Virus record (IMG/VR): IMGVR_UViG_3300032675_000001
Coordinates: 62,001-126,000 of that record
Length of the DNA stretch: 64,000 nt
Direction: 5' to 3' (one strand)
Shown: one piece after another, positions 11,974-44,613 of the stretch
How positions within the stretch are numbered: the stretch's first letter is position 1
Layout of the letters: each line of letters starts with the position of its first letter
The notes under the pieces: model-generated
Seen by the model: the letters and a program-made list of their open reading frames with translations, nothing else
The model's database searches: none
What the model was told of the DNA's origin: nothing
Position numbers and translations under genes: made by a program

Positions 11974-12002
11974 TGTGGTTACCTTTCGTTGTTGATGAAG
12001 TG

Positions 12003-12031
12003 ACATTACGCTATACACGGAGCGATGTCAA
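12003..12031 (-). promoter_or_regulatory. Sigma70-type promoter for the VWA gene
   Basis: TTGACA-17nt-TAATGT with an upstream T-tract. Confidence 0.6.
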
Positions 12032-12048
12032 CTCAAAAAATGATTTTT

Positions 12049-12147
12049 CTATTGCCCATATAACAAACTTCGCCAGAGCAGCACCAGTGCTACTCCAGCG
12101 ATGAGTATGGCAAGAAATGTTAAAATAGATAGTAGCATATTTGCCAT
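12049..12147 (-). CDS. Small single-TM peptide (32 aa)
   Basis: Not in the track. MANMLLSILTFLAILIAGVALVLLWRSLLYGQ*. Confidence 0.4.
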   Translation of the reverse strand: MANMLLSILTFLAILIAGVALVLLWRSLLYGQ

Positions 12148-12150
12148 TCC

Positions 12151-12183
12151 AAAAAAGTGGGGAGGGTGTCTCTACCCTCCCCA
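12151..12183 (-). terminator. Rho-independent terminator after the AAA+ gene
   Basis: TGGGGAGGGT-AGAGAC-ACCCTCCCCA followed by C and TTTTTT. Confidence 0.85.
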
Positions 12184-12196
12184 TGGAGCCGCTGGA

Positions 12197-13294: not shown

Positions 13295-13359
13295 GGTATT
13301 AAGCTCCATTAGGTTAAAAGTGATAGAGAGTGTTTTCCTTTGTTGCTCCCTATGAACCC

Positions 13360-19001: not shown

Positions 19002-19734
19002 TGTTATTTTTCATTTCCTCTATGACTTCATGCTCCCAGAATCTCAAAACAGTAAATCCACATTTCCTCAAATATGCATCTTGTGATTTGTCTAAGTTCA
19101 TTCTTTTTTGCTGCCTAAGGTCCGGAATTCCATTTTTCAATTTTGATGGATGTCCGTGCCAGTAATCACCATCCCATTGAATGATGATTTTTTTATCCGG
19201 TATTAGAACGTCAACTGATATTTTGTCTGCTATTAGTATTTGTTCTTCAAATATAATATCCTCGTTCAATAATATCTGCCTTCCGAGTAACTCTAATTTG
19301 TTTGGTCCTTTTTTTCTATTCTGTGCCATGTTTCCATTAGTAGATGCTCTCCTGATCCATTCTTCATCTGTATTTCTGCATTCTATGGTGCAGTAAGTTG
19401 GGTTATTATCTTTCAGTCGGCTTTTACTCCAATAGAAAGTATTATGACACATTTTACATTCAAATGCAACTTTATTTTTTGCCTGAAAATCATTAGCACA
19501 CTTATGACTGCAGAAATGATTAGCATGTGCCTCTAATGTCGCCAGACTCCTATACACTTGATTACCACACATAGCACATTCAACGATTCGTCCAGTTTTT
19601 CTTTGTGGTTTAGGGCTGGTCCTGCTACAATATGCACTGCAATATTGCCTATTTGCTGGCATATCTGCAGTATGAGGTTTTCCGCATCCCTTACATATTA
19701 TCGTTCTCGTTTTATATTTGTTTTTTCTGTACAT
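18961..19734 (-). mobile_element. Free-standing Vsr/DUF559-like endonuclease with N-terminal zinc-ribbon repeats, inserted in the methyltransferase gene
   Basis: Three CxxC...YCS/FCS/YCT..C units; VD..I...IIIQWDGDYWH and D....D..L...G.TVLRFWE motifs. Confidence 0.85.
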
Positions 19735-22267
19735 TTAATACTCCATTACTTTCGTTTGAAGTATTTATATGTTTTTTGATTTTTTCAATAATATCTGGTG
19801 GCGTATTTTCATCAATCAGATAACGCGAAACTTTATCCAATCCGCTGTTACGATCTGATCTGCTGGCTTTAGCAGCATAATACATTCTCTGAACATTCTC
19901 ATAATCCAGTGTGTCTTCCTCTGTGAATTCACAAGACTTAAAAAATCTTGCTGCTGATCCTGTGTCGCCTCGTTTCGCTGATGGAACTCTTTGATATTCA
20001 CCATAACAGTTGGTATTATCATCTCCTGTATGTGATGGTTCTGTTCCCTTTACATCGCCTTGTTGACCCTTACTTTCAGGAAACAATGCGACAACTTCAT
20101 CACTGCCATCATGAATGATATTAGCGGGGAATCTTCCTTTTAGTTCTGGTCGGTCAAACTCAGTTCTAGGTCTATGATCAGATTTTCTATAGTAACAGTT
20201 TGTGCAAATATCTTGATCTTCTTCTACTGGATTTAGTGTATCAGGAGCATAATCATCGCATCCCATATATTCCGAAGAGCCAGCAAGTGATCCTGACTTC
20301 GCCGTGCATTTTCCTTGCGGCGTTGCACTTAGCTTATCCTCTTCCGACATATAATCAACCCGACAATCATCAATATTGATTCCACCAGTTCCATGCTTTA
20401 GAACATTCTTCGCTACAGTCTTTTCAGATAGTGGCTTCCTAGCAACGCAAATAGGCTCCCACGCTGGCTTCAGTGCCGTGCCCCAGCCATCCCATTGTTT
20501 TGCTTCTTCTGTTGCTGGTGCAGTAACGTCCCAAGTTTCATAAACAGTTGTTCCACCAACAGTTGGCAATGCGGATTTTCCACTAGTGCTTCTAGCTTTA
20601 ATCTGCTGACCAATTACCCTTCGTTCAATATTATTATAAATGCCGGTCAATCTTTCAGAAGTTTCTTCATCCGGATTGAGCACTTCCTTCATGCGTTTCC
20701 ATTTTTCCTGTGGTGGCAACAAATTAACCCATGGGTCAAACTTTTTTCCATCTGCTGGTAGTGTTAGATAGTTACTTGCTCTGAACCCACACTCAGTGTC
20801 AATCTGCTTTCGCGTTTTCCCACTTTTTTTAAATATATTAGTCAGGATATTCTTTAGTTCAATTACTTCTTCATCATCGGCAGGATTTTCCATATGCTTA
20901 TCAATAGCCTTACCGATGTTCATAGACTTAGGAAAGCCAGAGTTTCCAGTAGTGAATGCTTTACCATCCCTTACTGCGACGAATGCGCCAGTAGGAACCT
21001 TAACACACCAAATCTTACCTTCATATTCAATCGGAGTTACAGTTGCCAGAGTGGTTTTATGTCCTTTCCAGCCTCGTATAACTTGTGATCCGAGTTGTTG
21101 GCAAATAACATCAGATTCTCCGCCCGATTGTCCAATGGATCGTGGTTTATATGATGCACTACTTCCGTGCGAGTAAGCATTCTGTTTAAATGCTTCGCTA
21201 CTATTAGACGGTGCTCCATGACATACCCGTCTCTCCTCGCCATAGGCAGGAAGTCCACTGGACAACGAACATACTTCGCTCCTTTGTAGTTTCCATGTGA
21301 GCGACGGTATGTTACTCCACCCTTCCAAGCAGGGTTGGTTTCTCCAGTCATGCGGTCCACCAAATCTTGTTCCGACTTCTCGGACCAGTTGGCTCTCCCC
21401 TTGTGTGCGTGAGCTTTCCATTCTATTCCCCGCAAAACTCCGTTGCATGTTTTTGAACACACAGGAGTTTTCACTCGTTGTAAATGTTTTATATTTCTGT
21501 AGAACGTTATCCCACATACTTGACAAGTATGTTGTTGTTTTCCAATATGTTCGTTTATAGGTGGCGATCCAGTATTGGAACGACCTATTGACTTGTTGGA
21601 ACATTGTTTGCTGCAAGTTTTGTTTCTTATAGCCTGTTCTTTGGTATGAGTCTGATAAGGATTGTTGCAAACCAGACAGGTTTTCCAAAAAGGGTATATT
21701 CTCTTGCGAACTAAGTTCTTCTGCAAAAGCGAATATTTCTCTTCCGCCTCGTTCAACAATGCAACGATGGTTTCGGCTGACGATTTGGTCTGTATGATCA
21801 GATTGTATTCTGTAAGCGGTATCCTTGATGTCATATTCATAAACTTCCTCAACTGGCATATAACTATATGTTTGAGTATATTTATCATAACACAAGACTA
21901 AATCGTTTGGTTTTATTGCTGTGTATGGTTTTATGCCGTTTGGCGTCACAATCTCTGTGTCATCAGATAGACAGCCATAGACCCACCCAATCTGATCGCG
22001 AATATCAAATCCAGCGTCTTCAATCGCTACCACCATTCTATGATATGTGCGAGTACCAGAGAATGCCAACAGGTGTCCGCCTGGCTTCAATACACGCATC
22101 ACCTCTGACCACATCTCAACACTATATGCGATGCCAGAACTGTCCCACGACTTACCCATGAAACCAAGTTCATATGGCGGATCAGTTACCACAGAATCAA
22201 CAGAGTTTTCTTCCATGGTTTTTAATACGTCAACACAGTTGCCGTTATGTAATACAAAGCTACTCAT
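19712..22267 (-). CDS. N6-adenine/N4-cytosine DNA methyltransferase (beta-type motif order), N-terminal fragment, intein-containing
   Basis: DPPY, W.YG|SGFPKS after intein removal, LKPAWEPI..ARKP, GRFPAN, SAARFF and AKASRSDRN motifs. Confidence 0.92.
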   Translation of the reverse strand: MSSFVLHNGNCVDVLKTMEENSVDSVVTDPPYELGFMGKSWDSSGIAYSVEMWSEVMRVLKPGGHLLAFSGTRTYHRMVVAIEDAGFDIRDQIGWVYGCLSDDTEIVTPNGIKPYTAIKPNDLVLCYDKYTQTYSYMPVEEVYEYDIKDTAYRIQSDHTDQIVSRNHRCIVERGGREIFAFAEELSSQENIPFLENLSGLQQSLSDSYQRTGYKKQNLQQTMFQQVNRSFQYWIATYKRTYWKTTTYLSSMWDNVLQKYKTFTTSENSCVFKNMQRSFAGNRMESSRTQGESQLVREVGTRFGGPHDWRNQPCLEGWSNIPSLTWKLQRSEVCSLSSGLPAYGEERRVCHGAPSNSSEAFKQNAYSHGSSASYKPRSIGQSGGESDVICQQLGSQVIRGWKGHKTTLATVTPIEYEGKIWCVKVPTGAFVAVRDGKAFTTGNSGFPKSMNIGKAIDKHMENPADDEEVIELKNILTNIFKKSGKTRKQIDTECGFRASNYLTLPADGKKFDPWVNLLPPQEKWKRMKEVLNPDEETSERLTGIYNNIERRVIGQQIKARSTSGKSALPTVGGTTVYETWDVTAPATEEAKQWDGWGTALKPAWEPICVARKPLSEKTVAKNVLKHGTGGINIDDCRVDYMSEEDKLSATPQGKCTAKSGSLAGSSEYMGCDDYAPDTLNPVEEDQDICTNCYYRKSDHRPRTEFDRPELKGRFPANIIHDGSDEVVALFPESKGQQGDVKGTEPSHTGDDNTNCYGEYQRVPSAKRGDTGSAARFFKSCEFTEEDTLDYENVQRMYYAAKASRSDRNSGLDKVSRYLIDENTPPDIIEKIKKHINTSNESNGVLNVQKKQI
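19732..19769 (-). promoter_or_regulatory. TATAAATA late promoter plus RBS-sequestering hairpin for the Vsr-like endonuclease
   Basis: TATAAATA at 19762..19769. AATACTTCA pairs with TGGAGTATT, which contains the GGAG RBS. Confidence 0.7.
20942..21973 (-). mobile_element. Intein (344 aa) in the DNA methyltransferase
   Basis: Begins CLSDDTEIVT; block B SRNHR; block F/G YEGKIWCVKVPTGAFVAVRDGKAFTTGN followed by Ser. Removal restores YG-SGFPKS. Confidence 0.93.
21037..21840 (-). CDS. HNH homing endonuclease encoded in the +1 frame inside the intein
   Basis: CxxC zinc repeats, NPAWKGG, and GYVMEHRLIVAKHL...EVVHHINHDPLDNRAENL. GAGGA RBS 5 nt before ATG 21840; ATAAATA at 21879..21885. Confidence 0.9.
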   Translation of the reverse strand: MNMTSRIPLTEYNLIIQTKSSAETIVALLNEAEEKYSLLQKNLVRKRIYPFWKTCLVCNNPYQTHTKEQAIRNKTCSKQCSNKSIGRSNTGSPPINEHIGKQQHTCQVCGITFYRNIKHLQRVKTPVCSKTCNGVLRGIEWKAHAHKGRANWSEKSEQDLVDRMTGETNPAWKGGVTYRRSHGNYKGAKYVRCPVDFLPMARRDGYVMEHRLIVAKHLNRMLTRTEVVHHINHDPLDNRAENLMLFANNSDHKLYEAGKDIKPLWQL

Positions 22268-22321: not shown

Positions 22322-22795
22322 CTATTGTTTTGGGCAAACCGATGAGGTTGACATAAGATACCAGCCATCTTTGAACTCACTGCTTATGCTAAAGCCCAAC
22401 TTTGTATAAAAGTCAGGAATATCAGTGGATAAAACCACCTCTTGCCCTTTTGCCTTGCTAAAATATATAGCTTCTCTGGTTATTCGTTTTGCTATTCCTT
22501 GGCCTCTATGGGATTCGGCAACTGCAACCCACGATAGGGCAAAGAAATGTTGAATAGCTAACATGTTCAGTGCAGCGAAACCAACAAGCTCCTCGCCATC
22601 TTCTACGAGGATATAATACTTGGTTGCATTCTGCAGCGAAACCAAAAAGTCAATCTGTTCTAACTTGATCTTTTTCTGTTTCGGGTCTTGTATTAAAATA
22701 GCATCATCTACATGAAAGAATGGATAACATTGATACAGTAATCCAGTTACCTTTTCAATGTTATCCAGTTCTTCAACTATTCTTAGTCGGATCAT
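22322..22795 (-). CDS. GNAT acetyltransferase
   Basis: VAV.ESHRGQGIA and FYTKLGF motifs. Confidence 0.88.
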   Translation of the reverse strand: MIRLRIVEELDNIEKVTGLLYQCYPFFHVDDAILIQDPKQKKIKLEQIDFLVSLQNATKYYILVEDGEELVGFAALNMLAIQHFFALSWVAVAESHRGQGIAKRITREAIYFSKAKGQEVVLSTDIPDFYTKLGFSISSEFKDGWYLMSTSSVCPKQ

Positions 22796-23106
22796 TCGCC
22801 GTAGCAAATGGTCTGACGAGTTACAAAGTTATTATACTGATCGTAAGTATCACGGACTTCACATGTGCCACGGAAATGATCGTAGTAGCGATATGCAATA
22901 ATCGTATGATACACTGGATAAGTAGGTGCAACTACTACCGTGTGTGGCTGAGTTGATTCAACGATGACACCACCGATGATTCCCCCAATAACCAAAGGAG
23001 CAACCCATCTTCCTCCACCACCATGCCAGTGACCGGGGCGAGCGTCCGCCATTGCTGGTGCAGTTAGAAGTGCCAATCCCGCTAATGCTGATACAAGTTT
23101 CTTCAT
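22792..23106 (-). CDS. Exported Gly-rich protein
   Basis: Signal peptide ending AMA/ADA, HGGGG and hydrophobic IGGIIGG. Upstream TTGACA-17nt-TATATT promoter. Confidence 0.7.
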   Translation of the reverse strand: MKKLVSALAGLALLTAPAMADARPGHWHGGGGRWVAPLVIGGIIGGVIVESTQPHTVVVAPTYPVYHTIIAYRYYDHFRGTCEVRDTYDQYNNFVTRQTICYGE

Positions 23107-23166: not shown

Positions 23167-26100
23167 TTAAAGTTGCTCAAAACGCTCACGAAGCCATGCC
23201 CATTCGTAACTTAGCTTCAGCTTATCAAACTCACCGTTTACATCGTCATAGTATTCATCAGCGTCTAATGCACCCTTGATACTATATTCCGAGAACTCCC
23301 CTTGACCCTTGTTTAACCATGCTTCCAGCCTTTCTCGCGAAATGTCAGTATCATCAGCCTTTAGCTTCAACACTTCACGAAATGCCGTTCTCCACGTGGA
23401 GAATGGATCGGTATTGTACTGTGCAATACCTGATAGCAGTGGCACTACTTCATGTTCATCATCCAACGTAAAGTCAAGCCCATTTCCTACATTAGCTAAT
23501 GTAAGTTTCTTATTGTAACAAATGAGGCCCTGGTGGCCGTATATCAAACCATTTACTGGATTTTTGGCATGGAAAATATAATGCTTCGGAACCTGCATTC
23601 TATCTGGTTGCCAGTTGAAGTCAAACTTTAAACTGACTTTCAGCTTAGCAAATACAGTAAAGCACCATGGAGTGTCACTTGCCTCAACGGCGGCATGATA
23701 CGCGGCTACACGACCATTTACACCATCAACTCTAACAACACGATTCTTCAAGTTTTTGGTTGCTTGAAGTAGATGTTCCCAGTTTTCTTCTGCACCAGTT
23801 TCACCATTGCTCAAATATACAATGTCCAGTGGCCTTGACATCGCAAGTTTAGGTGCACGTTTGATGTAAGGATAGTCATACAGTTCCTTCTTAACGTGAT
23901 CCTTTACTTCCTTGGGAACAGTGATTCGGGTTGCGCCCGTGCTGGTGATAATGATATTCTTGTTCTCTGGTGCCCACAAGCACATAGGCTCAACATCTTG
24001 AACATTGACGCTAGCATTATCTTCCGTAATGATGGTAGCATATGGAAAACCATCAACCTTTTTAATGGCATTAACATGCGTATCATCGCTTGTAACGATG
24101 ATTGGCTCCGGAAGTCTATTGGTCTTGATGGTCCCATTGTAGTTTACCTTATGGTAATCTTCCAACACTTGCATATCGTCAATGATTTCACGAGTCTTGT
24201 TTACGTCAATAAAAAATGTATCGCCAAACTTAAGCTTACCGCTCGGGAAGACATGAAGATGATCACGAGCAAATGGATCAACCGTATATGAGAAATCAAA
24301 GTTGGAATAATCACATACGCTACTGCATATCCAAAGATAATGCTCTTTCTTCTGATGCTGCCTAGAGATAATATTTCTCAACGTGTTAAGATAGCTTTCG
24401 TCATACGGAATAGTGGTTACATGTTTTCCGCTTGCTTTGCTTTTTAATAGTTCAACTACCTTTTCCGTTTCTTTATTACCATGATCAATAACCACAATGT
24501 CATGGACACACTGTGTTGCAGTTGCACGAATGTTCTTGACAAAGTTGAGGTTACTTAGATGCTCAATGATCTTAATCCACTTGGTATCTTCGCCAAATGT
24601 CTCACGGTTAACCAAGAATGTGCTACCCCAATGTGACCACTGAGTTCCGAACACATGGACCATTTTCATCTGCCATGGGTTAGGATAATATTCAAAGTCA
24701 AAATTGGTGTAATCCAGTTCTGAGTTTAGTACCCAAAACAGATCGGTAGTAGATCGGTTGGAACACCGATTTATAGTATCAACCCAAGAGTTAAGATAAC
24801 GTGTCTTTTGTATGTTAGGGTACTTTGCCTTTAACTCGTCAAATCTTGCAAGAGACTCTGGGTTGCCCTTATCAACATAGAACATATCAGACTTTTTGAA
24901 TAACTTAAACAATGTTTTGTCATCAAGCTTTTCATCAACTACCCAATTGATTTCTCTGTGGCCCTTTAACCACATATTGGCATTGATCAAGTATGTCTGT
25001 GTCAACTCACTGTCAGATGATCCAAATGCATGAACATACTCTGCTTGTTCAATGGTCGGTCTCCATGAGAAATCAAAATCAGTGTAATCAAGATCAGAAT
25101 TTAGTGCCCAAAAAATCTCACCATGGTGTTCTTCAACAAGATCACTCAGAGTGGTCTTAACGTAATACCGAGGGTAATCAGAAACCACATTCTCATCAAT
25201 ACTAAGCCATTCCATTTTAACGATTTCACCGTTTGTATTTGGCGAAACATATCGTGGACCATCTTCTGGATTTTCAATGGTTCCAAACTGATAGATATAT
25301 GGAGGAGACAACTCATCAGGATGCCATGAAAAGTCAAACGTGTCAACATTTATTCCATCAGGAATGACCCAGTTTTCTTTTGATGGAAGACGCATTGCCG
25401 TTGGATTCCCAACATAAAAGTTATCTGTTGCGCCCGGAACAATATACATTGGACCACCGGTTTTCTGATGCTGAGTACCGAAGATGTAGATATATGGATC
25501 ATTGGTATCATCAGGATGCCATGAATAATCAAAATCTCCGATTACTGTTGGATCGGTAATGGTCCATTTAGACTTGTCTGGTTTACGAATGGCTTTAATG
25601 ATACGAGTATCAATATACTTTAACGGAGAACTTTCTGTTGCACCCGGAGCAATATATCTTGGACCGCCTGTCTTTTGCCACTGAGTTCCGAACTGATAGA
25701 TATATGGCTGATCGTCCAAATATGGATGCCAAGAGAAATCAAATGCATCAACATCAATCTCATCGGGATTGTATTCCCAGTTGTCTCTATTAGGAAGCAC
25801 TTTGGCAGTTTGACATTCTTCATACTTGACTGCGACACCACCCGGAACAGTATATGTAGGACCACCAGTCAATGCCCACTGTGTAGGGAACTGATAGATA
25901 TAGGGTGGTGCAGTATCATCAGGATGCCAAGAAAAGTCAAAACCTTCCATGTCCACATTATCCGGAATGGTCCAGTTTTTCATGCTTGGATGACGAATGG
26001 CTTTCACATCATCAACATATTTTACTTCAGTGGCATTAGGCATTACATAACGTGGACCGCCTGTCTTCTGCCACTGAGTTCCAAACTGATAGATATATTT

Positions 26101-28104
26101 TGGCTCACCGGGATTTGGCTTCCAAGAGAAATCAAACTTGCTAGCATCAATGTTGTCTGGAACTTCCCAGTACTGCATATCATTATCAAGAGTTGCAATA
26201 ACATCTGTAACATACTTGACCTGAGTTGCACCTTCCACTCTATATTCAATAGTCGGCATTACTTCTGCTGGATGCCACTGATTACCAAACACATAGATAT
26301 ATGGTTCATCAGTTTCATCAGGATGCCATGACCAATCAAAGTCTTTTATTTTCAGATTTCTCAGAATAGTAAAATTTTGTTCATTTGGCAAACGAGTTGC
26401 CTTGATGATAGATGTATCAATATACTTGACGGGGCTGTTCTTATCGCAACCGGGCGTCATATATGTGGGGCCACCGGTTTTTTGATGCTGAGTCCCAAAT
26501 TTATAGATATATGGTTGATCTTCCGCATATGGGTGCCACGAGAAATCAAACGTTGATTCGTCAATAAGTTCATGATCATAAACCCAGTTTGTTTTGTCAG
26601 GCATTGCTATAGCAACCTGACCCTCTACGTACTGAACTTTTATGGCACCGGGAACGGTGTAGACAGGACCTCCACTAAATGCCCATTGAGTACCAAACAC
26701 GTAAATATAATCAGGGCTAGTAGCATCTGGATGCCAAGAGAAATCAAAACCGTTAACGTCCACGCTTTGAGGGGATGTCCAATGCTCCATGCTAGGCAGT
26801 CTTTTAACTTTTTGTACATCAACATATTTTCTTTCTGTTGCACCCGGAACAATATACATTGGTCCACCGGTTTTCTGCCATTGCGTCCCGAACTCATAGA
26901 TGTAGGGAGGATCGTGTGGATTTGGTTCCCATGAGTAGTCAAAACCCCTATCATCAACGTTATCAGGGATAATCCAGTTTGTCAAGCTTGGATTACGTGT
27001 GGCACGTTCATCCATATATTTGTATTCAGTGGCACCTTCTACCACATATTGAATTGATACCTTGTCTTCTGGCTTGTTCCATTGATTGCCCCAAGCATAT
27101 ATATACGGCGGGGATGTTGGATCAGGAACCCAGCTATAATCAATACCATATGAGTCTTCCAAGTGTTGAAAATTATTGGGCTGAGGCAGCAACTTTGCTG
27201 AACTTGGTATATGCTTTTCATCTATTGCACCTTCCATAAGATACCGAATTGTAGGCATCTTTGTGCTATCATACTGATTGTTACCAAATACATAATTTAG
27301 AGTTGGTTCACGTGGATCAGGTCTCCATGAGAAATCAAAACTGTTTATGTCAATAGGATATAATATTTCCCACTTATTCCATTCAGGTAGAACCGGAATC
27401 TTTTCTGGCATATATTTTTTATCAGTTGCTCCGGGGGCATGATACTCTAACGTGGACTTGAGGGTGCCCTCAATATACTTGTTTCCCCATATATAAATGA
27501 AGGGAGGGTCCATAGGATCAGGACGCCAAGACATATCAAATCTTGACTTATCAACTTCCTGAACTTCTACCCAACAATCATTGGGTAATAGTTCAACAAT
27601 GTTGTTCATATACTTCACGTTCACAGCACCGGGAACATGATACTCTAAAACAGACTTAATCTGTACGGGGAAGTATTTGCATCCCCACTTATAGATATAA
27701 GGAGGGTCAGATGGATCAGGGTGCCACGAGAAATCAAACTTGGTATGATCTACGGTGTCAAGTTCAACCCAGCAATCGTTGCTAAGGTTTCTGCGTTTTA
27801 CCGGATCAACATCGGAGCGATATATGATGACATCGCTATGTTCTTTGGGGCAAAGCCAAGTTCCAGAATCCTTTTGATGTTGGCTTGGCCACACATTATT
27901 ATGTTCTTCCGCCCACACATCTTCATCGGGAAGGAACTCAAAGTCAAAGTCCCAGTCAAACCCACGATAGTCACAGAACTCATTAATGATCCAGAAATGT
28001 TCAGTCGTTGACTGGCTTCTGGCATCCTCTAATGATTCTGCAAACTTTTCTCTTGGGTGAACGTTTGGTTTTTTACCGTAATAAAAAACATCTCTAATTG
28101 CCAT
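23167..28104 (-). CDS. 1645-aa protein: 13 tandem FDFSWHPD repeats plus several glycosyltransferase-A-like modules
   Basis: Repeat consensus FDFSWHPDxxxPPYIYxFGTQWQKTGGPxYxVPGAxxxKY. The last module aligns by eye with 51179..52126. Confidence 0.85.
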   Translation of the reverse strand: MAIRDVFYYGKKPNVHPREKFAESLEDARSQSTTEHFWIINEFCDYRGFDWDFDFEFLPDEDVWAEEHNNVWPSQHQKDSGTWLCPKEHSDVIIYRSDVDPVKRRNLSNDCWVELDTVDHTKFDFSWHPDPSDPPYIYKWGCKYFPVQIKSVLEYHVPGAVNVKYMNNIVELLPNDCWVEVQEVDKSRFDMSWRPDPMDPPFIYIWGNKYIEGTLKSTLEYHAPGATDKKYMPEKIPVLPEWNKWEILYPIDINSFDFSWRPDPREPTLNYVFGNNQYDSTKMPTIRYLMEGAIDEKHIPSSAKLLPQPNNFQHLEDSYGIDYSWVPDPTSPPYIYAWGNQWNKPEDKVSIQYVVEGATEYKYMDERATRNPSLTNWIIPDNVDDRGFDYSWEPNPHDPPYIYEFGTQWQKTGGPMYIVPGATERKYVDVQKVKRLPSMEHWTSPQSVDVNGFDFSWHPDATSPDYIYVFGTQWAFSGGPVYTVPGAIKVQYVEGQVAIAMPDKTNWVYDHELIDESTFDFSWHPYAEDQPYIYKFGTQHQKTGGPTYMTPGCDKNSPVKYIDTSIIKATRLPNEQNFTILRNLKIKDFDWSWHPDETDEPYIYVFGNQWHPAEVMPTIEYRVEGATQVKYVTDVIATLDNDMQYWEVPDNIDASKFDFSWKPNPGEPKYIYQFGTQWQKTGGPRYVMPNATEVKYVDDVKAIRHPSMKNWTIPDNVDMEGFDFSWHPDDTAPPYIYQFPTQWALTGGPTYTVPGGVAVKYEECQTAKVLPNRDNWEYNPDEIDVDAFDFSWHPYLDDQPYIYQFGTQWQKTGGPRYIAPGATESSPLKYIDTRIIKAIRKPDKSKWTITDPTVIGDFDYSWHPDDTNDPYIYIFGTQHQKTGGPMYIVPGATDNFYVGNPTAMRLPSKENWVIPDGINVDTFDFSWHPDELSPPYIYQFGTIENPEDGPRYVSPNTNGEIVKMEWLSIDENVVSDYPRYYVKTTLSDLVEEHHGEIFWALNSDLDYTDFDFSWRPTIEQAEYVHAFGSSDSELTQTYLINANMWLKGHREINWVVDEKLDDKTLFKLFKKSDMFYVDKGNPESLARFDELKAKYPNIQKTRYLNSWVDTINRCSNRSTTDLFWVLNSELDYTNFDFEYYPNPWQMKMVHVFGTQWSHWGSTFLVNRETFGEDTKWIKIIEHLSNLNFVKNIRATATQCVHDIVVIDHGNKETEKVVELLKSKASGKHVTTIPYDESYLNTLRNIISRQHQKKEHYLWICSSVCDYSNFDFSYTVDPFARDHLHVFPSGKLKFGDTFFIDVNKTREIIDDMQVLEDYHKVNYNGTIKTNRLPEPIIVTSDDTHVNAIKKVDGFPYATIITEDNASVNVQDVEPMCLWAPENKNIIITSTGATRITVPKEVKDHVKKELYDYPYIKRAPKLAMSRPLDIVYLSNGETGAEENWEHLLQATKNLKNRVVRVDGVNGRVAAYHAAVEASDTPWCFTVFAKLKVSLKFDFNWQPDRMQVPKHYIFHAKNPVNGLIYGHQGLICYNKKLTLANVGNGLDFTLDDEHEVVPLLSGIAQYNTDPFSTWRTAFREVLKLKADDTDISRERLEAWLNKGQGEFSEYSIKGALDADEYYDDVNGEFDKLKLSYEWAWLRERFEQL
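25230..27790 (-). repeat. 13 degenerate ~60-codon coding repeats; boundaries approximate
   Basis: Recurring (+)-strand words such as ggatgcca.gagaaatcaaa and ccaccggtttt; the protein repeat was counted by eye. Confidence 0.85.
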
Positions 28105-28136: not shown

Positions 28137-28229
28137 TTATTTTATATACCTACACGGGTCTTTAGTAGTCTTACCAAGATACATCAATCCGGTTTTGTTA
28201 TGGGTTTTCTTGTACAAATAAATAATCAT
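28137..28229 (-). pseudogene. Truncated GIY-YIG-like (Seg-like) endonuclease remnant
   Basis: MIIYLYKKTHNKTGLMYLGKTTKDPCRYIK*: the YLY...YLG motif, then a stop after 30 aa. Confidence 0.7.
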
Positions 28230-28296
28230 ATGCTGATGCTCCTTAATAGCGTTAGAGTGAGTGGGGGCGCAATCCCGCGACTCACAACTATTTATA
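28227..28296 (-). promoter_or_regulatory. Late promoter + conserved structured leader, copy B
   Basis: TATAAATA gtt GTGAGT cgc GGGATTGCGCCCC c ACTCAC tctaac GCT attaagg AGC atcagcat ATG. Confidence 0.8.
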
Positions 28297-28297
28297 T

Positions 28298-29776
28298 TTA
28301 AGAGCAAACTTTGACACCGTATAGCAACTCGAAACGATCCGCATCGGCGCGACCATTTACCATAGGTTCGCCACGAATGTTTAATGATGTGTTGAGGAGC
28401 ATAGGACAACCTGTCTCCTCATACCAACGCTCTAGCAGTCTTCTGATTCCTGATCCATCATTCGGAACGCTCTGAACACGGCTAGTCCCGTCAGCATGAA
28501 CGATAGCAGGGAATAGGTCAGGATGCCTACAAGGAGCGACGACTTGCATATACCTACTGTTATTCCAGCCGTAAGGCATATCAAAATAGTCAGACAAATG
28601 CTCCTCCAAAATGACTGGAGCAAACGGTCTGAACTTTTGTCTGCGCTTGATTTCATTTACTTTGTCCTTAATCTCTGGTCCTCTAGGATCGGCAAGTAGA
28701 GAACGATTCCCCAATGCTCTTGGTCCGAACTCTGCTCTTCCACTTGCTACTCCTACAATCTTGTGTGTATACAACTCTTTTACGATATTGTCAACAGGAT
28801 AATCACCTTTGATTTCATGACCGAGGAATGCATCCTTCCATGCTAATCTTTTACCATATCCAAGAGCGGCTGCACCAAGAGAGTTTCCTGCATCACCGGG
28901 ATTTGGCATGATCCATATGTTATTAAAGAATGCACCAAGTTTACGATTGGCAGAACAGTTCAATGCAACGCCACCGCCAAACACAAGATTGCGACTCTTC
29001 GCAAAGATTCGAGCTTTAATCATGACTGTAGAAATCAACGATTCAGTGAGAACCTGAGTTGATGCTGCAATGTCCATCTCATTCGCATCTTTACCCAAAT
29101 ATTCGTCTTGTAATCCTGTGTGAAGATTAACGGCAAAATCTAGGGTTGATCTATCCTCTATCAAATCTTCAAGCTTGTTAACATGAATTGGATTACCATA
29201 TGCAGCCATTCCCATAAGGATATACTCTTCATCTAATGGACGCAATCCTACATAGGCAGTCATGGCAGAATACATCAATCCTATTGAATCTGGATATTTC
29301 TTGCCCCACAGACGTTTATATACTGCTCGTCCATTTTTGTCATATGATGCATCCCATATAGACATAGTATCAAGTTCACCAATAGCATCAATGATGACTA
29401 CCGTAGCATTATCATACGGGCTAGTTTGAAATCCAGCAGCAGCATGTGACAGGTGATGGCTGTGAGTACTCAGGGTAGTAAAATCAAACCGATCATAGAT
29501 ATCATGACCCATGATCTTGGAAATGCTTAGAGGACCAATCGGCTGTTTAGCCTTGAACTGCCTGATAGCTTTTAGCCACGGCTTTTCATAGTAGTGAAGT
29601 TCATACTCACCATTGGTATATTTTAGAGCATCATCCACCAATGCATGACATAGATTGGCATCATGTTTATTCTTACTGTAACGCTCACTGTGCCCTGCAA
29701 ACTTGATTTCACCATGATCATCCACAACAGTTATGGCAGCATCATGGAATCCGCAACTAATACCAATATAGTTCAT
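28298..29776 (-). CDS. Carbamoyltransferase (NodU/CmcH family)
   Basis: HDAA, HHLSHA, DAIGE, GGVALNC, GRAEFGPRALGNRS, FRPFAP, HADGTSRVQ and LLNTSLN motifs. Confidence 0.95.
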   Translation of the reverse strand: MNYIGISCGFHDAAITVVDDHGEIKFAGHSERYSKNKHDANLCHALVDDALKYTNGEYELHYYEKPWLKAIRQFKAKQPIGPLSISKIMGHDIYDRFDFTTLSTHSHHLSHAAAGFQTSPYDNATVVIIDAIGELDTMSIWDASYDKNGRAVYKRLWGKKYPDSIGLMYSAMTAYVGLRPLDEEYILMGMAAYGNPIHVNKLEDLIEDRSTLDFAVNLHTGLQDEYLGKDANEMDIAASTQVLTESLISTVMIKARIFAKSRNLVFGGGVALNCSANRKLGAFFNNIWIMPNPGDAGNSLGAAALGYGKRLAWKDAFLGHEIKGDYPVDNIVKELYTHKIVGVASGRAEFGPRALGNRSLLADPRGPEIKDKVNEIKRRQKFRPFAPVILEEHLSDYFDMPYGWNNSRYMQVVAPCRHPDLFPAIVHADGTSRVQSVPNDGSGIRRLLERWYEETGCPMLLNTSLNIRGEPMVNGRADADRFELLYGVKVCS

Positions 29777-29792
29777 ACAACATATCACCCGA

Positions 29793-29828: not shown

Positions 29829-31052
29829 ATGAATAAATCCTTATGCCCATATCCTTTTATACATTCACATGTTAGCGCAACATATGAAAGAAAGCTTTGC
29901 TGTGTCGCAAATAGAAGTATAACGGAGTTGCACAAAACTACCGATGAGTACTGGAACTCAGATTATATCAAAAAAACTAGACTTGATATGATATCCGGTA
30001 TTCCAATACCTGACTGCAGCTTTTGTTATGATCATGAAAACAATGGCGTAAAATCACTTAGACAAACTCTTAATGAACAGTTTCCCATACAGCATTTAGT
30101 TGATCAGACCAAAGAAGATGGATCATTGGAAGTTCCGCCATCCTTTTTTGACTATCGTTCCACGACATGTAATCTGCATTGCACTACCTGTGACCACAAT
30201 CATAGTTCTAAATATGCAAAAATTTCCAATAAGCTATTGGGTAAAGAAACGATCCATAAAGTTGACATTGCCTATGAAAACAGCTTGGGAGAAGAAATCA
30301 TCACTGGACTGAGGAACAAAACGGTTAATACCATCTATTGGGCAGGCGGCGAACCAATGATAATGAAAATGCATTGGGATGTGATTGGCGAAATGGAAAA
30401 GTTATATGATGATGCCGAATATTGCTCCTACATAAAGAGCATAAAGCTATACTATAACACGAATATGACCAAGTTATACTGGAAGGGGCGTCTAATACCA
30501 GAAATACTATCCAAGTTTGATGTTACGTTATGGGCCAGTATAGATGGAGTAGAAGAAACGTTTGAGTACTGTAGAGACGGAGCAAGCTGGGAAACGGTCA
30601 AGAACAACTGGCTAATATATAAAAAATACGTTCCAAAGACTTGGGTTACATCCGTTCTATCTGCCCCAGTATTGATGGATATAGATCGCTTTCTTAGCTT
30701 TTTTGAAGCGACTGATTCCACAACCGACTTTTTCAATCACCAGTATGTGCCAAATGCGTTCTTGAACTTGCTGGATATCAGGCAGTACCCATCGGAAATA
30801 TTCAACGATATCATTGACAATGCCATAGCCAGAGTTGAGAAGTCTCCTTTAGGTGGCAAAGAATACACGCTATCTATTCTAAGAAAGTATAAAGCAGAAA
30901 ACCAACACATTGACTCAGTTGGTTATTCCGAAATAAAAAAACAAATCATTCAAAGAGACAAGTTTCTAATATCCGGATTATCATTTGAGCAATTACTTGA
31001 ACAGATTAATCCTGACGCTCACCGATGGTATAAGTCTATAACAGTTGATTAG
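29829..31052 (+). CDS. Radical SAM protein with N-terminal Twitch/SPASM-like Cys cluster
   Basis: CPYPF..H...CC, C..CY, CNLHCTTC, AGGEP and SIDG motifs. Confidence 0.9.
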   Translation: MNKSLCPYPFIHSHVSATYERKLCCVANRSITELHKTTDEYWNSDYIKKTRLDMISGIPIPDCSFCYDHENNGVKSLRQTLNEQFPIQHLVDQTKEDGSLEVPPSFFDYRSTTCNLHCTTCDHNHSSKYAKISNKLLGKETIHKVDIAYENSLGEEIITGLRNKTVNTIYWAGGEPMIMKMHWDVIGEMEKLYDDAEYCSYIKSIKLYYNTNMTKLYWKGRLIPEILSKFDVTLWASIDGVEETFEYCRDGASWETVKNNWLIYKKYVPKTWVTSVLSAPVLMDIDRFLSFFEATDSTTDFFNHQYVPNAFLNLLDIRQYPSEIFNDIIDNAIARVEKSPLGGKEYTLSILRKYKAENQHIDSVGYSEIKKQIIQRDKFLISGLSFEQLLEQINPDAHRWYKSITVD

Positions 31053-31809
31053 ATAGTTCTATTAACTTTGGATAAAAATCCTCAAAGACCTTCTTGACTT
31101 CATCAGCATTGACAATCTGATCATATGGATCAATTGATAACTGCTTTTCCCTGTAGATACCAAAAGCCTTTTCTCGCTCAGCATCACTCAGATTATCAGA
31201 TTTAGCAATCAGAGTATCATACTCCACAGTATCATAAGTGATCATTGAATCAATGATCTTTTTGTGTTGCTGTTCTATCAGATAACGAGAAACGATGAAA
31301 GACTTTAGTTCATCAATATCTACGTTTAGCATCATGGTATTACGATATGTGCTAAAGATAAAACTCTTTTTCGCAAACATGGCGCTGATTACCTTGTGCT
31401 CAAAGCTTCGTTCAACATACAAAAACTTAAACCCAAGATTAGTCAGATAATTTATTCCGTCAGCAAATCCAATTGATGCCATTCTGTCATCAAGAAACAC
31501 TCTGCATGTTAGAGCCTGAGACATATTCGCTTTGGATATGATATCAAGCCGTTCCTTGGCAACGTCTGACATTGTATTAAAGGTTGCTGCTGGCTTATTG
31601 TAAATCTTTAATTTACCATTTTCCAATGCTATAGTGTGAACTAGGCCAGCCTGAACCGTGAAGATTTCTTGCAGAGATACCACATCGTTGTATTTATTAC
31701 TAAGAGAGTAATTAACAAATGCTTCTGTTAACTGCGTTCCTGATCTTGGAACGCCCAAAATCACATAACGGTGATGTTCTAAATCCCACGGAAGATTGCT
31801 GTTAAACAT
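31036..31809 (-). CDS. Sulfotransferase-like (P-loop) protein
   Basis: ILGVPRSGT (PAPS 5'-PSB-like), R......S and YD motifs. Start moved to MFNSNL. Confidence 0.55.
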   Translation of the reverse strand: MFNSNLPWDLEHHRYVILGVPRSGTQLTEAFVNYSLSNKYNDVVSLQEIFTVQAGLVHTIALENGKLKIYNKPAATFNTMSDVAKERLDIISKANMSQALTCRVFLDDRMASIGFADGINYLTNLGFKFLYVERSFEHKVISAMFAKKSFIFSTYRNTMMLNVDIDELKSFIVSRYLIEQQHKKIIDSMITYDTVEYDTLIAKSDNLSDAEREKAFGIYREKQLSIDPYDQIVNADEVKKVFEDFYPKLIELSNQLL

Positions 31810-31813
31810 TCTA

Positions 31814-31918
31814 TTACTTATAGATGAATGGATCGCGCTTGCGAAGTTCCTTGATGCGCTTTTTGTATGCGCGATCACGTTTTATATTATTGATAATCTT
31901 TTTAATCCACTTGAACAT
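31814..31918 (-). CDS. Small basic protein (34 aa)
   Basis: Not in the track. MFKWIKKIINNIKRDRAYKKRIKELRKRDPFIYK*, with AGGA upstream. Confidence 0.65.
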   Translation of the reverse strand: MFKWIKKIINNIKRDRAYKKRIKELRKRDPFIYK

Positions 31919-32678
31919 TATTGTTATCCTTTATAAAATTGTACAGTTCTTCAGCATACAGACGATGTGGTTCCTCACTATGATGCCAGTACTGTGCCTT
32001 GTCATTGGTGTATCCCATGTGTCTGTATTTCCAGTAGAATGCTTGACTTTCATCTGTACCAACATTGTAATATCTGGTCTTGTCTATCTTGTTGACAAGG
32101 TAACTGGTAAAATGTTCATTCGGAGCAAACATATGCATGGTGTCACACATGACATAATCAATACCCAAAGACTTTAAATAATACTGTGTCATTAATACAT
32201 CAGTGGCTGACCAGTTTTCCAATATCGTTTCATTTTCTGCCATGAACTGATGATATGGAGGAATCATTTCCTTTTCATCGTCTGTATTACCATGCCATCC
32301 AAAGTTTATACGAAAGAAACTATTGCTTGAAGAATCAAACCATGGACTTGCAGAATTTCCCTCATTATAATAACATGCTCGTTTTTTTGCTGGAACTTCC
32401 ATGCGTGTGCTTTCAGTCCATCCTATTATAACAAACACGTCCATTGTATCGGGATTATATTCTTCATGAAACCAACTAAGAATGCTACGAGCAATACCAG
32501 AATTGGTGGCACCATTCAATGAAATATTAAGTGGACGATAGCCCATTTTCTTAGCTAGTACAGCACCATATGCGTTGTCACGGTTGTAGTGGCTATCTTC
32601 TGTTCCATCAATTTCTGATCCGGCAGAATGGCTACATCCGGATATTAAGGCGATCTTTTCTTTTGGCATATTGGTCAT
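31902..32678 (-). CDS. SGNH-hydrolase-like protein
   Basis: GCSHSAG, G..N..I and terminal HH...H motifs. Confidence 0.6.
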   Translation of the reverse strand: MTNMPKEKIALISGCSHSAGSEIDGTEDSHYNRDNAYGAVLAKKMGYRPLNISLNGATNSGIARSILSWFHEEYNPDTMDVFVIIGWTESTRMEVPAKKRACYYNEGNSASPWFDSSSNSFFRINFGWHGNTDDEKEMIPPYHQFMAENETILENWSATDVLMTQYYLKSLGIDYVMCDTMHMFAPNEHFTSYLVNKIDKTRYYNVGTDESQAFYWKYRHMGYTNDKAQYWHHSEEPHRLYAEELYNFIKDNNNVQVD

Positions 32679-34891: not shown

Positions 34892-34901
34892 CTTAGGTTC
34901 C

Positions 34902-35987
34902 TTATTCAGACATATTTAGAGCATCGCTGACAGTGAAATATTTAATAAGGTCTTTTGTTACGGTAAAATCAGTCTGATTGTTCAGTATATCAGCATTGTG
35001 TTCTACTATGGGTTTAATATTGTGTGTCCACTGAATCATCTCATCGTCAGAAAGGCTGCACAATCGTTTTATTTCATTTACTATCGCATCCATTCTTTCT
35101 CTAGGGTCAGTGATCAGATCATATGATTCATCAATATAAGGAGCAAAGGTTTTGTATCCTCGGGAGCGCAATGTAGCGAGAAAGCCTACAGTTCCAACCA
35201 CAATGAATGGATGTTTCATTGCCAGCGGCTTGAATATCTTCTCAGAGAAGAAACAACCCGGAGATATTATTTGACCATCTGGATAATACCTATACATGGT
35301 TTCAGTTACTACCGAGAAATAAGAATTGCTGAAATACGACCAATCATCTGGTGTGATGTCCACTGGATTCTCATCATAGCTATTAATATTCAGTTTTAAT
35401 GGTAGCCTGTTTATATTCTGCACACAGTATGGAAAGTTGTCCTTGTATTCAATAATATTGTCAATAAAAGATGGCTCGCTTCCTTGAAATGAATAGTAAG
35501 CCTGATCAACAAGTCCTGCCTTAAACATTTCCTCTAGTAGTTCTATTCTATGTTGACGATGAACTTTATTAAAGCAAAGAAACTTTTTATCCCTCAGACC
35601 CGGTACATATTCATGAGGCGTGTGGATTCCATAGGATGACTTAAACATCGCTTCAAAATAAGACATTGATGCTATTTTGAGTAATGATTCTTCGTGGTTC
35701 ATTTCCAAGAACGTATTATAGGCTTGCTCACCCTTAAGATCACCAGTCAGGAAAAAGAACTGAGCATTAGGAACACTGTCTTTTACGTACTTAACTATTG
35801 AATGAACTCTAGAGATAACATCGTACCAAAATGATTCAGACAGGCAATCAAACATGATGTTTGTTTTGCCTTCTGAATAAGCTAATCGTATATCGTTAAC
35901 TACGGTAAAGAAATCTCTGTGAATAATACTGTGATCACTATGCAGCCCAGCATATATGGGATGCATAGTGTCTTTAAAAGGAATCAA
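34902..35987 (-). CDS. Putative GT-B glycosyltransferase (TET/SEK family), paralog 1
   Basis: FLCFN..HR.HR; SVVTET...SEKIFKP...HPF...GYKTF..DESYD, reminiscent of the GT10 TEK motif. Confidence 0.6.
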   Translation of the reverse strand: MIPFKDTMHPIYAGLHSDHSIIHRDFFTVVNDIRLAYSEGKTNIMFDCLSESFWYDVISRVHSIVKYVKDSVPNAQFFFLTGDLKGEQAYNTFLEMNHEESLLKIASMSYFEAMFKSSYGIHTPHEYVPGLRDKKFLCFNKVHRQHRIELLEEMFKAGLVDQAYYSFQGSEPSFIDNIIEYKDNFPYCVQNINRLPLKLNINSYDENPVDITPDDWSYFSNSYFSVVTETMYRYYPDGQIISPGCFFSEKIFKPLAMKHPFIVVGTVGFLATLRSRGYKTFAPYIDESYDLITDPRERMDAIVNEIKRLCSLSDDEMIQWTHNIKPIVEHNADILNNQTDFTVTKDLIKYFTVSDALNMSE

Positions 35988-36013
35988 ATCATTCCAGTTT
36001 TCAAGTATTTGTG

Positions 36014-37237: not shown

Positions 37238-37325
37238 GAAAATATTTATAGTCCCTGTTGGTGTGTAATAAATTTTATCTGATATTCCATTATACCATGG
37301 TATAATGCGCCGCGTTATTTAATAC

Positions 37326-41810: not shown

Positions 41811-41814
41811 GCCA

Positions 41815-44612: not shown

Positions 44613-44613
44613 A

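What the first reader, a model, noticed from the sequence alone, without database searches (positions are those of the whole stretch)
23167..28104. 1645-aa protein built by amplifying a subdomain of a glycosyltransferase-like module
Seen: 13 tandem ~60-aa FDFSWHPD...PYIY.FG repeats. The same FDF.(W/Y).P...(H/Y).F element also ends each GT-A-like module (one N-terminal, four C-terminal). The last module matches 51179..52126 (RVDGV.G..AA..AA.EASDT; NGL.YG; WR..FRE), but DGD is replaced by FAK. Inference: a catalytically degenerate, aromatic-rich, multivalent glycan-binding scaffold or chain-length ruler that partners the active GT.
Basis: partly seen in the sequence, partly recalled or inferred. 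Interest (0 to 1): 0.7.

Follow-up and report, generated by a model that had tools for sequence, protein, structure and literature searches.

The report
Giant phage protein from glycosyltransferase half-domains
A freshwater jumbo phage encodes a 1,645-residue protein built entirely from whole, shortened and half copies of one glycosyltransferase-type domain, and it is probably a non-catalytic scaffold partner of a small active glycosyltransferase; the half-domain repeat has no described counterpart, but its function is untested.

Summary
ORF 23167..28104 (-) is intact, and independent lake-metagenome contigs reproduce it with zero differences.

**Architecture**
- It holds 13 tandem 65-70-aa repeats (aa 110-975).
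- These lie between a partial N-terminal module and four C-terminal modules (A-D).
- Reciprocal HMM tests show the repeat's first ~35-40 residues are the element found in every module.
- AlphaFold2 models are confident: framework pLDDT 88.6, repeats pLDDT 93.
- One repeat equals the GT-A half that starts at the DxD strand, without the nucleotide-binding half.
- The array has no significant neighbour in PDB.

**Link to the 315-aa ORF**
- Module D is homologous to ORF 51179..52126 (profile E 7.9e-24).
- Module D has lost the DxD (FAK) and several other family-invariant residues.
- A tree places module D inside a shorter "type-2" paralog class. That class is fused behind the canonical "type-1" GT in other metagenomic proteins and lies in one cassette with it in Ralstonia phage RsoM2USA.

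**Family and context**
- In 150 sampled members, repeat number runs 11-38 on a constant framework.
- The gene sits in a conserved sugar-modification operon.

**What remains inference**
- Glycan binding, a ruler role and physical pairing are untested; the complex prediction gave no answer.

Verdict: a new variant of a known kind. Interest 0.62.

The parts
23167..28104 (-). Whole gene for the 1645-aa protein (P0001). It is acidic (pI 4.95) and has no predicted transmembrane segment.
   Evidence: assembly verified.
27778..28104 (-). N-terminal partial module (aa 1-109). It carries the DxD-position strand (FWIINEF) and a degenerate FDW/FDF element.
   Evidence: Module-end HMM gives 24.4 bits at aa 34-82. 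Module A, B and C HMMs give 19-25 bits, against 9.1 or less for shuffles. The region is more than 90% conserved in the family.
25180..27777 (-). Array of 13 tandem repeats of 65-70 aa (aa 110-975). Each repeat is a GT-A half-domain: a remnant of the DxD strand, the FDFSW.P loop, a beta-hairpin and a long strand.
   Evidence: AF2 model of aa 375-708 has pLDDT 93 and pTM 0.78.
24910..25179 (-). Module A (aa 976-1065), a shortened module that carries the FDFSWRP element.
   Evidence: Repeat HMM gives 22.5-24 bits. The module B HMM cross-hits it at 41.9 bits.
24514..24909 (-). Module B (aa 1066-1197), a compact domain of the GT-A / nucleotide-diphospho-sugar-transferase fold. It has N-S-E at the DxD position.
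24109..24513 (-). Module C (aa 1198-1332), a compact GT-A-type domain. It has S-S-V at the DxD position.
23836..24108 (-). Beta-rich connector (aa 1333-1423) leading into module D.
   Evidence: DSSP of the model. The B4GALNT1 alignment covers model 365-587. No sequence relatives were found outside the family.
23170..23835 (-). Module D (aa 1424-1645), a type-2 paralog of the 315-aa GT. It has lost D47, D66xD68, N109, G110, K113 and H126-E127 of the family (numbering of the 315-aa ORF).
23644..23652 (-). F1485-A1486-K1487, the residues that replace the DxD (DGD) of the family.
   Evidence: The motif is present in 138 of 150 family members.
51179..52126 (-). 315-aa type-1 GT-A-like protein that keeps every family-invariant residue, including D66-G-D68. 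It is the presumed catalytic partner.
   Evidence: Distant relatives fuse this domain behind a GT-B domain.
49180..50661 (-). Radical-SAM enzyme, ortholog of RsoM2USA_349, which lies between the type-1 and type-2 genes in that phage.
   Evidence: 36% identity, E 3e-100.
28298..29788 (-). NodU/Nol-like carbamoyltransferase immediately upstream of the giant gene. In relatives it ends 8 bp before the giant gene.
28137..28297 (-). Spacer holding one copy of a dispersed ~80-nt leader element plus a 30-codon stump with GIY...YLG spacing. It is an insertion relative to related phages.
29829..46387 (.). Upstream sugar-modification island. It includes a B12-radical-SAM methyltransferase-like gene (32675..34891), an NDP-sugar dehydrogenase (36014..37237), an SDR epimerase/dehydratase (39508..40488) and further radical-SAM/SPASM genes.
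   Evidence: Partly syntenic in L006 and L007.
22322..22807 (-). GNAT acetyltransferase downstream of the giant gene.

Best explanation
The giant protein is best read as the non-catalytic scaffold subunit of a two-part, phage-encoded glycosyltransferase system that works on a glycan made by the surrounding sugar-modification island.

What is shown:
- The protein is an iterated GT-A-type domain at four levels of truncation: one full type-2 domain (D), two compact domains (B, C), two shortened ones (N-terminal, A) and 13 half-domains.
- The half-domains keep only the part of the GT-A domain that follows the DxD strand. They have no nucleotide-binding half.
- Module D has lost the DxD and the other polar residues that are invariant in the family, yet its replacement residues are themselves conserved.
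- Module D descends from a type-2 paralog class that is recurrently fused to, or encoded beside, the canonical type-1 enzyme. In this phage the type-1 enzyme is the separate 315-aa ORF.

What is inferred:
- Module D docks the 315-aa catalytic subunit.
- The rigid, acidic, aromatic-rich array of 13 half-domains (11-38 in relatives) provides a long multivalent surface. In GT-A enzymes, from my own knowledge, the half after the DxD strand is the acceptor side. The array could therefore hold or space a long periodic acceptor, either a polysaccharide chain or a repetitive glycoprotein or virion surface.
- Repeat number would then tune reach or chain length.
For: - Architecture and homology.
- Strand order: the repeat's order (strand, loop, hairpin, long strand) equals model residues 147-220 of module B.
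- Degeneracy under selection: D47V, D66F, D68K, N109H, G110Q and K113I, with H126-E127 deleted. The replacements are 87-100% conserved in the giant family.
- Partner logic: type-1 plus type-2 fusions exist. In the tree the giant-family modules nest in type 2 with 100/100 and 100/96 support. The two halves of the fused protein P0244 are the nearest sampled relatives of the window's two proteins. RsoM2USA has the cassette type-1 (350), radical SAM (349), type-2 (348), and its radical-SAM gene is orthologous to the one beside the window's type-1 gene.
- Type 1 looks like a real enzyme: all invariant residues are kept, identity is ~80% across thousands of clusters, and distant relatives fuse it to GT-B domains.
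- Context: a carbamoyltransferase lies directly upstream in three genomes, with NDP-sugar dehydrogenase, epimerase, GNAT and B12-radical-SAM genes nearby.
- Labile array on a fixed framework: 11-38 repeats, length = 734 + 66.2n with r 0.98. A 95%-identical relative differs by exactly two repeats.
Against: - No direct evidence of binding between the two proteins. The complex job gave no answer.
- No evidence that the repeats bind carbohydrate. The conserved aromatics may simply form the inter-repeat core.
- Model coordinates could not be inspected, so the rod geometry and surface exposure are unknown.
- Modules B and C might still be catalytic, since metal-independent GT-A enzymes exist.
- The acceptor is unknown.
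- The two genes lie 23 kb apart in this phage.
- Rosetta-stone logic shows functional linkage, not a physical complex.
Confidence: 0.45

Rival explanations
1. The giant protein is itself an active multi-domain glycosyltransferase or polymerase, in the manner of K4CP, LARGE or PmHAS. Module B and/or C would catalyse transfer without a canonical DxD, and the repeat array would act as a processivity or product-guiding track.
For: The best Foldseek matches are bifunctional two-GT-A polymerases. Modules B and C are well-folded GT-A-type domains with many invariant residues; module B keeps an acidic residue in N-S-E-L-D-Y. The operon supplies modified nucleotide sugars.
Against: No module keeps a DxD. 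No Pfam GT model matches even at E of 1 or less. Modules B and C are only ~130 aa, which is minimal for a GT-A. Their VIA neighbours are as often nucleotidyltransferases as glycosyltransferases.
Confidence: 0.2
2. It is a virion-associated or secreted fibre or adhesin. The repeat array would be a structural rod of variable length, and the degenerate GT-like modules would act as lectin-like receptor-binding or attachment domains.
For: Repeat number is highly variable (11-38) and changes between near-identical strains, as is common in host-interaction proteins. The array is modelled as rigid (pTM 0.78). In RsoM2USA the type-1 and type-2 genes border the structural module (PMC8504454). A gene with a virion structural protein family match lies near the window's type-1 gene.
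Against: There are no PHROG structural hits for the giant protein. The gene lies in an enzyme operon, not among tail genes. No trimerisation or fibre-type motifs were found. RsoM2USA virion proteomics list neither 348 nor 350, although only the major bands were analysed.
Confidence: 0.15
3. The system hypermodifies phage DNA with sugars, and the giant protein organises that reaction.
For: Phage GT-A enzymes commonly glycosylate DNA (own knowledge). A weak language-model lead points to TET-associated glycosyltransferases (score 0.82). A DNA methyltransferase gene lies nearby.
Against: The repeat array is strongly acidic (pI 4.6). The phage's ThyA-family gene is a true thymidylate synthase, scoring 363 bits against an equivalog cut-off of 327. 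No TET/JBP was detected, though the control genomes were silent as well.
Confidence: 0.06
4. The giant protein is the substrate. It would be a repetitive carrier whose conserved Ser/Thr, for example in FDFSW and G-T-Q-W, are glycosylated by the 315-aa enzyme, like glycosylated fibril proteins of giant viruses.
For: There is one invariant Ser per repeat. The gene is co-located with sugar enzymes.
Against: The conserved Ser sits in a motif that is also conserved in the non-repeat modules, which suggests a structural role. There is no precedent and no test.
Confidence: 0.06

Closest known systems
Two-GT-A-domain polymerases: E. coli K4 chondroitin polymerase K4CP (PDB 2z86), LARGE1, heparosan synthase PmHS2
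   Same: Several GT-A-type domains in tandem on one chain. These are the best Foldseek matches: E 8.5e-6 with probability 0.99 for K4CP. They are likewise encoded with nucleotide-sugar-supplying enzymes.
   Different: From my own knowledge, those enzymes have two complete, DxD-bearing active sites. Here no module keeps a DxD, two modules are shortened, and 13 units are half-domains. Sequence identity is 8-10%, and no Pfam GT model matches.
Catalytic plus pseudo-glycosyltransferase pairs: CHSY3-CHPF chondroitin synthase complex, and the LH3 GT domain with its accessory GT-like domain
   Same: A GT-A-fold paralog that has lost catalytic residues accompanies an active one. These are structural matches. 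The relationship parallels type 1 (315 aa) with type 2 (module D).
   Different: Physical pairing is not demonstrated here (one search gave no answer). The degenerate partner carries a 13-38-unit half-domain array that those systems lack.
Ralstonia phage RsoM2USA gp350 / gp349 / gp348 (all annotated hypothetical)
   Same: True homologs. gp350 is type 1 (40% identity to the 315-aa ORF over 96% of its length). gp348 is type 2 and is the best match of module D. gp349 is orthologous to the radical-SAM gene beside the window's type-1 gene.
   Different: gp348 is a free-standing 233-aa protein that still has DGD. RsoM2USA has no repeat array and no modules A-C.
Fused type-1 + type-2 proteins from metagenomes (for example P0244, 544 aa; P0242, 876 aa)
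   Same: They carry the same two paralog classes on one chain. The two halves of P0244 are the nearest sampled relatives of the window's 315-aa ORF and of the giant family's module D.
   Different: Their type-2 halves keep the DxD and have no FDFSW repeats.

Membership tests
GT-A fold (nucleotide-diphospho-sugar transferase superfamily) | Rossmann-like alpha/beta/alpha domain with the characteristic mixed sheet | tested here: met
GT-A fold (nucleotide-diphospho-sugar transferase superfamily) | DxD (or equivalent) metal / nucleotide-sugar-binding motif at the end of the central strand | tested here: not met
   The position reads FAK in module D, N-S-E in B, S-S-V in C, N-x-x in A and N-E-F in the N-terminal unit. 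The repeats lack the entire nucleotide-binding half.
CAZy GT2 / Pfam Glycos_transf_2 and relatives | Significant match to the family HMM | tested here: not met
   The giant protein and the 315-aa ORF give no Pfam family at E of 1 or less. Among 74 diverse type-1 relatives only three single weak hits appear, E 1e-3 to 4e-3.
CAZy GT2 / Pfam Glycos_transf_2 and relatives | D, DxD, catalytic acid (TED-like) and QxxRW-like signature of inverting and processive GT2 enzymes | tested here: inconclusive
   The type-1 family conserves D47, D66xD68, T-H126-E127 and Q166-x-x-R169 with suggestive spacing. Equivalence to the GT2 signature rests on my memory of those motifs and was not aligned here. Module D lacks all four.
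Uncharacterised phage type-1 / type-2 GT-like family (alignment A3) | Profile match and phylogenetic placement | tested here: met
   Module D matches at E 7.9e-24 and the 315-aa ORF at E 6.7e-117. Module D nests within type 2 and the 315-aa ORF within type 1.
Bifunctional two-site GT polymerases (K4CP / LARGE type) | Two complete active sites, each with its own DxD | tested here: not met
   No intact DxD occurs in any module of the giant protein.
Pseudo-glycosyltransferase scaffold partner (CHPF-like) | GT-A fold with the catalytic motif lost but the sequence under purifying selection | tested here: met
   The replacement residues are 87-100% conserved in 53 family members.
Pseudo-glycosyltransferase scaffold partner (CHPF-like) | Stable complex with the active paralog | tested here: inconclusive
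   Complex prediction returned no answer. The only support is indirect, from domain fusions and cassette evidence.
Known carbohydrate-binding modules or lectin repeats | Match to a described CBM or lectin family, or demonstrated sugar binding | tested here: not met
   No Pfam hit. No PDB or AFDB fold neighbour of that kind. Actual binding cannot be tested with these tools.
Phage virion fibre or structural proteins | Match to structural PHROGs or solved fibre folds, or presence in virions | tested here: not met
   The only PHROG hits are two sub-threshold matches to families of unknown function. There are no fibre folds. Presence in virions cannot be tested here.

The most novel reading that the evidence does not exclude
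The half-domain array is a new kind of protein ruler or track. It would be a rigid rod of GT-A acceptor-side half-domains along which a growing, carbamoylated, acetylated or methylated glycan is laid while the docked 315-aa enzyme extends it. The genetically labile repeat number (11-38) would then set the polymer length, or the reach of the enzyme over a virion or cell-surface lattice.
Probability: 0.12. Interest if true: 0.85.

Novelty: new variant of a known kind. Interest (0 to 1): 0.62.

Why it matters
Glycosyltransferase folds are normally treated as indivisible catalytic units. Here half of a GT-A domain has become an independent repeat that tiles into a long, confidently modelled array with no solved structural neighbour.

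The protein family is abundant in freshwater jumbo phages. There are at least 1,282 clusters at 90% identity within the length range searched, and none has a name or a Pfam model.

If the scaffold and partner reading is right, three things follow:
- It gives a phage example of a catalytic plus pseudo-glycosyltransferase pair.
- It offers a handle on what the large sugar-modification islands of jumbo phages make.
- It offers a natural series of 11-38 repeats for testing whether repeat number sets glycan length or reach.

It also defines two paralog classes, type 1 and type 2, that could be turned into annotation models.

Tried and rejected
- Pfam and PHROGs on the giant protein and the 315-aa ORF gave nothing usable.
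- Megablast of the gene against 50,697 phage records found no match. tblastn found only RsoM2USA.
- PDB sequence searches, single and profile, gave only chance-level hits.
- Foldseek PDB and AFDB-cluster searches on the repeat model found no significant named neighbour. The Atlas fold search returned only viral hypothetical clusters. The Atlas feature search restricted to named clusters found nothing for the repeats.
- Tandem Repeats Finder sees no DNA-level repeat.
- Complex prediction of the 315-aa ORF with module D returned no answer. This is not evidence either way.
- The repeat HMM found no repeats in 150 diverse relatives of the 315-aa family, nor anywhere else in the 360-kb genome.
- DNA-hypermodification leads did not hold up. 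ThyA is a true thymidylate synthase. The TET/JBP search was empty, but its controls were silent too.
- Searching the contigs behind L006 and L007 for the type-1 gene failed because those records are not held.
- Literature searches for the motif, for RsoM2USA and for jumbo-phage glycosyltransferases found no description of this family.
- I first read the spacer element as leading only GIY-YIG genes. The intact copy at 50660..51175 is an HNH_3 protein, so that reading was corrected.
Full report
**The object.** Window 23167..28104 (-) is one uninterrupted ORF of 1645 aa. The window lies in a 360,683-bp virus record with direct terminal repeats, so this is a jumbo phage. At least 16 lake-water runs hold the gene word for word, and an independent freshwater study holds it at 0.93. 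A 15,050-nt contig from two of those runs spans 22900-28259 with no differences. Contigs of the independent study tile the gene with no differences. The repeat array is therefore not an assembly artefact.

**The repeats.**
- Thirteen copies of a 65-70-aa unit occupy aa 110-975. Their consensus is W..P D..D...FDFSWHPD...PPYIY.FGTQW...GGP.Y.VPGA...KY.
- Each copy scores 75-107 bits against the repeat HMM.
- Copies are 25-64% identical. Identity is higher at an offset of four units: R5/R9 63%, R6/R10 58%, R7/R11 64%.
- No DNA-level tandem repeat is detectable. The array is old and has diverged under selection.
- It is acidic (pI 4.6), 15.6% aromatic and 10.3% proline. The protein has no hydrophobic segment of transmembrane strength.
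- In the 360-kb genome the element occurs only in this gene.

**The modules share the element.**
- An HMM built from the 13 repeats alone finds the first ~35-40 positions at aa 998-1047, 1123-1180 and 1481-1530, and weakly at 1258-1288. The region E-value is 3e-15, and no shuffle exceeded 9.6 bits.
- An HMM built only from the corresponding segments of the four C-terminal modules across the family contains no repeat. It still recovers all 13 repeats (E 4.8e-85) and the N-terminal element at aa 34-82 (24.4 bits; shuffles 5.6 or less).
- Modules A, B and C are homologous to one another, with cross-hits of 42-52 bits. Module B's HMM also detects module D and the type-2 domains described below.
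- The N-terminal 109 residues match the second half of the module HMMs at 19-25 bits.
- The whole protein is therefore built from one ancestral domain at different degrees of truncation.

**Fold.**
- AlphaFold2 on a 53-sequence family alignment gives a confident model of aa 976-1645 (pLDDT 88.6, pTM 0.75).
- Foldseek ranks multi-GT-A enzymes first: K4CP chondroitin polymerase (E 8.5e-6), LH3, Mimivirus R699, LARGE1, CHSY3-CHPF and heparosan synthase. The reviewed AlphaFold set gives the same picture.
- A five-repeat model (aa 375-708, 121-row alignment) is also confident (pLDDT 93, pTM 0.78). It is all-beta.
- That model has no significant neighbour in PDB by Foldseek (best E 1.8). AFDB clusters give only marginal, unnamed matches, and the ESM Atlas gives only viral hypothetical proteins.
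- The secondary-structure strings agree. Module B runs strand, helix, strand, helix, DxD-position strand, FDF loop, hairpin, short helix, long strand. The repeat keeps everything from the DxD-position strand onward.
- A repeat is therefore a GT-A half-domain without the nucleotide-binding half. By itself it cannot be a glycosyltransferase.

**The small paralog and the loss of the active-site motif.**
- ORF 51179..52126 (-) encodes 315 aa. It matches module D by BLASTP (E 6e-14), and its family profile matches module D at E 7.9e-24.
- Its family is large and conserved. More than 8000 clusters at 90% identity are about 80% identical to it, and 1185 representatives remain at 50% clustering.
- No Pfam model matches it. 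Three of 74 diverse members give weak GT2-type hits, and an Atlas cluster is auto-named 'Glycosyltransferase 2-like'.
- The family conserves E20, G45, D47, D66-x-D68, N100, N103, Y107-G-N-G-G111, K113, W115, H126-E127, Q166, R169, R173-E174 and K177.
- In the giant family these become D47V, D66F, D68K, N109H, G110Q and K113I, with H126-E127 deleted and Q166S. The replacements are themselves 87-100% conserved, and F[TS]VFAKL is present in 138 of 150 members. This is a repurposed domain, not a decaying one.
- The pattern D...DxD...(T)HE...Q..R in the small enzyme recalls the D, DxD, TED, QxxRW signature of inverting GT2 enzymes. That is a lead from memory, not a test made here.

**Two paralog classes and the partner argument.**
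- Among the 150 best representatives, many proteins of 440-880 aa carry a canonical domain (about 300-400 bits) followed directly by a shorter, divergent one (65-200 bits).
- The second class (type 2) lacks D47, N109, W115 and H126-E127 but usually keeps the DxD.
- RsoM2USA encodes type 1 as gp350 and type 2 as gp348.
- In a maximum-likelihood tree, type 1 separates from type 2 plus the giant-family modules with 100/100 support. The giant-family modules nest within type 2 as sister to P0244_d2 (100/96). The nearest row to the window's 315-aa ORF is P0244_d1.
- One fused protein therefore unites the nearest sampled relatives of the window's two separate proteins.
- In RsoM2USA the gene between 350 and 348 is a radical-SAM enzyme. 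It is orthologous (36% identity, E 3e-100) to the gene that follows the window's type-1 gene.
- Distant relatives of about 740 aa fuse type 1 behind a GT-B glycosyltransferase domain. That fits type 1 being a working sugar-transfer enzyme.
- This is functional-linkage evidence. The direct complex prediction gave no answer and is not used.

**Family and context.**
- At least 1282 clusters of 905-2879 aa match the whole protein. All are unnamed and many come from contigs of 320-360 kb.
- The C-terminal 670 aa are collinear and 56-95% identical in 120 homologs. Length differences lie in the array.
- In 150 sampled proteins the array has 11-38 repeats. Length = 734 + 66.2 x repeats, with r 0.98.
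- The nearest relative is about 95% identical and lacks aa 383-513, which is exactly two units.
- Gene order is conserved. A NodU/Nol-like carbamoyltransferase ends 8 bp before the giant gene in two related contigs of about 340 kb, preceded by a B12-radical-SAM gene; an NDP-sugar dehydrogenase lies upstream in one of the two.
- The window adds GNATs, an SDR epimerase/dehydratase and several radical-SAM/SPASM genes.

**Interpretation.**
- The most economical function is a non-catalytic scaffold that carries the type-2 docking module for the 315-aa enzyme. It would present a long multivalent array of acceptor-side half-domains to a periodic substrate made or modified by the island (confidence 0.45).
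- The rivals are an active polymerase using modules B or C (0.20), a virion fibre or adhesin (0.15), DNA hypermodification (0.06) and self-glycosylation (0.06).
- DNA work is disfavoured by the acidity of the array and by a genuine thymidylate synthase in place of a hydroxymethylase.
- I found no paper describing the family.

**Limits.**
- Both structures are predictions from family alignments.
- Coordinates could not be inspected, so I could not measure the rod's geometry or the exposure of the aromatic residues.
- The host, the acceptor and the expression timing are unknown.

Noticed in passing
window 28137..28297 (-); other copies at window ~50595..50670 and at genome positions C1:40498, 47776, 160689 and 284171: A dispersed ~80-nt element has six copies in the genome. 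It consists of a stem-loop, an AAGGAG Shine-Dalgarno, an ATG and the first codons M(T/I)IY. Upstream of the giant gene it leads only a 30-codon stump with GIY...YLG spacing, in a spacer that is 8 bp long in related phages. The copy at ~50,600 leads an intact HNH_3 endonuclease ORF (50660..51175, + strand). Logan contigs break at this element and depth doubles there.
   Followed up: partly
window 50660..51175 (+) and 52123..52791 (-): The 315-aa type-1 GT gene is flanked on both sides by free-standing HNH endonuclease genes. One of them separates it from its conserved radical-SAM neighbour, which suggests homing-endonuclease invasion of the cassette.
   Followed up: partly
window 10600..13320: This block has 47.5% GC against ~40% elsewhere, with long ORFs on both strands. 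The minus-strand ORFs are the real genes: 10672..12018 matches phrog_1314 (labelled HNH endonuclease, 362 bits) and 12197..13309 matches phrog_1297 (ATPase, 329 bits). The plus-strand ORFs are shadows with no family match. No Rfam family matches.
   Followed up: partly
window 13736..15799 (-): A 687-aa protein has a C-terminal ART-PolyVal domain (ADP-ribosyltransferase of polyvalent proteins, E 2.7e-19). A related 833-aa protein lies downstream of the giant gene in contig L007.
   Followed up: no
window 29829..50661: There is an unusually dense set of radical-SAM genes: 29829..31052 (+), 32675..34891 (B12-binding), 41815..42792, 43094..44368 and 45155..46387 (both with an N-terminal SPASM domain), and 49180..50661. 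They are interleaved with sugar-nucleotide enzymes and with ORFs that have no family (34902..35987, 37326..38456, 38444..39550, 40485..41858).
   Followed up: no
window 3233..5234 (-) and 5682..6503 (-): A second sugar set (a DegT/DnrJ/EryC1 aminotransferase and an NAD epimerase/dehydratase) lies about 20 kb from the giant gene. Next to it are an I-TevI-like GIY-YIG endonuclease and a genuine thymidylate synthase (6546..7376).
   Followed up: no
window 19712..22267 (-): An 851-aa protein has only an N-terminal N6/N4 DNA methylase match (aa 1-147). The remaining ~700 aa are unassigned.
   Followed up: no
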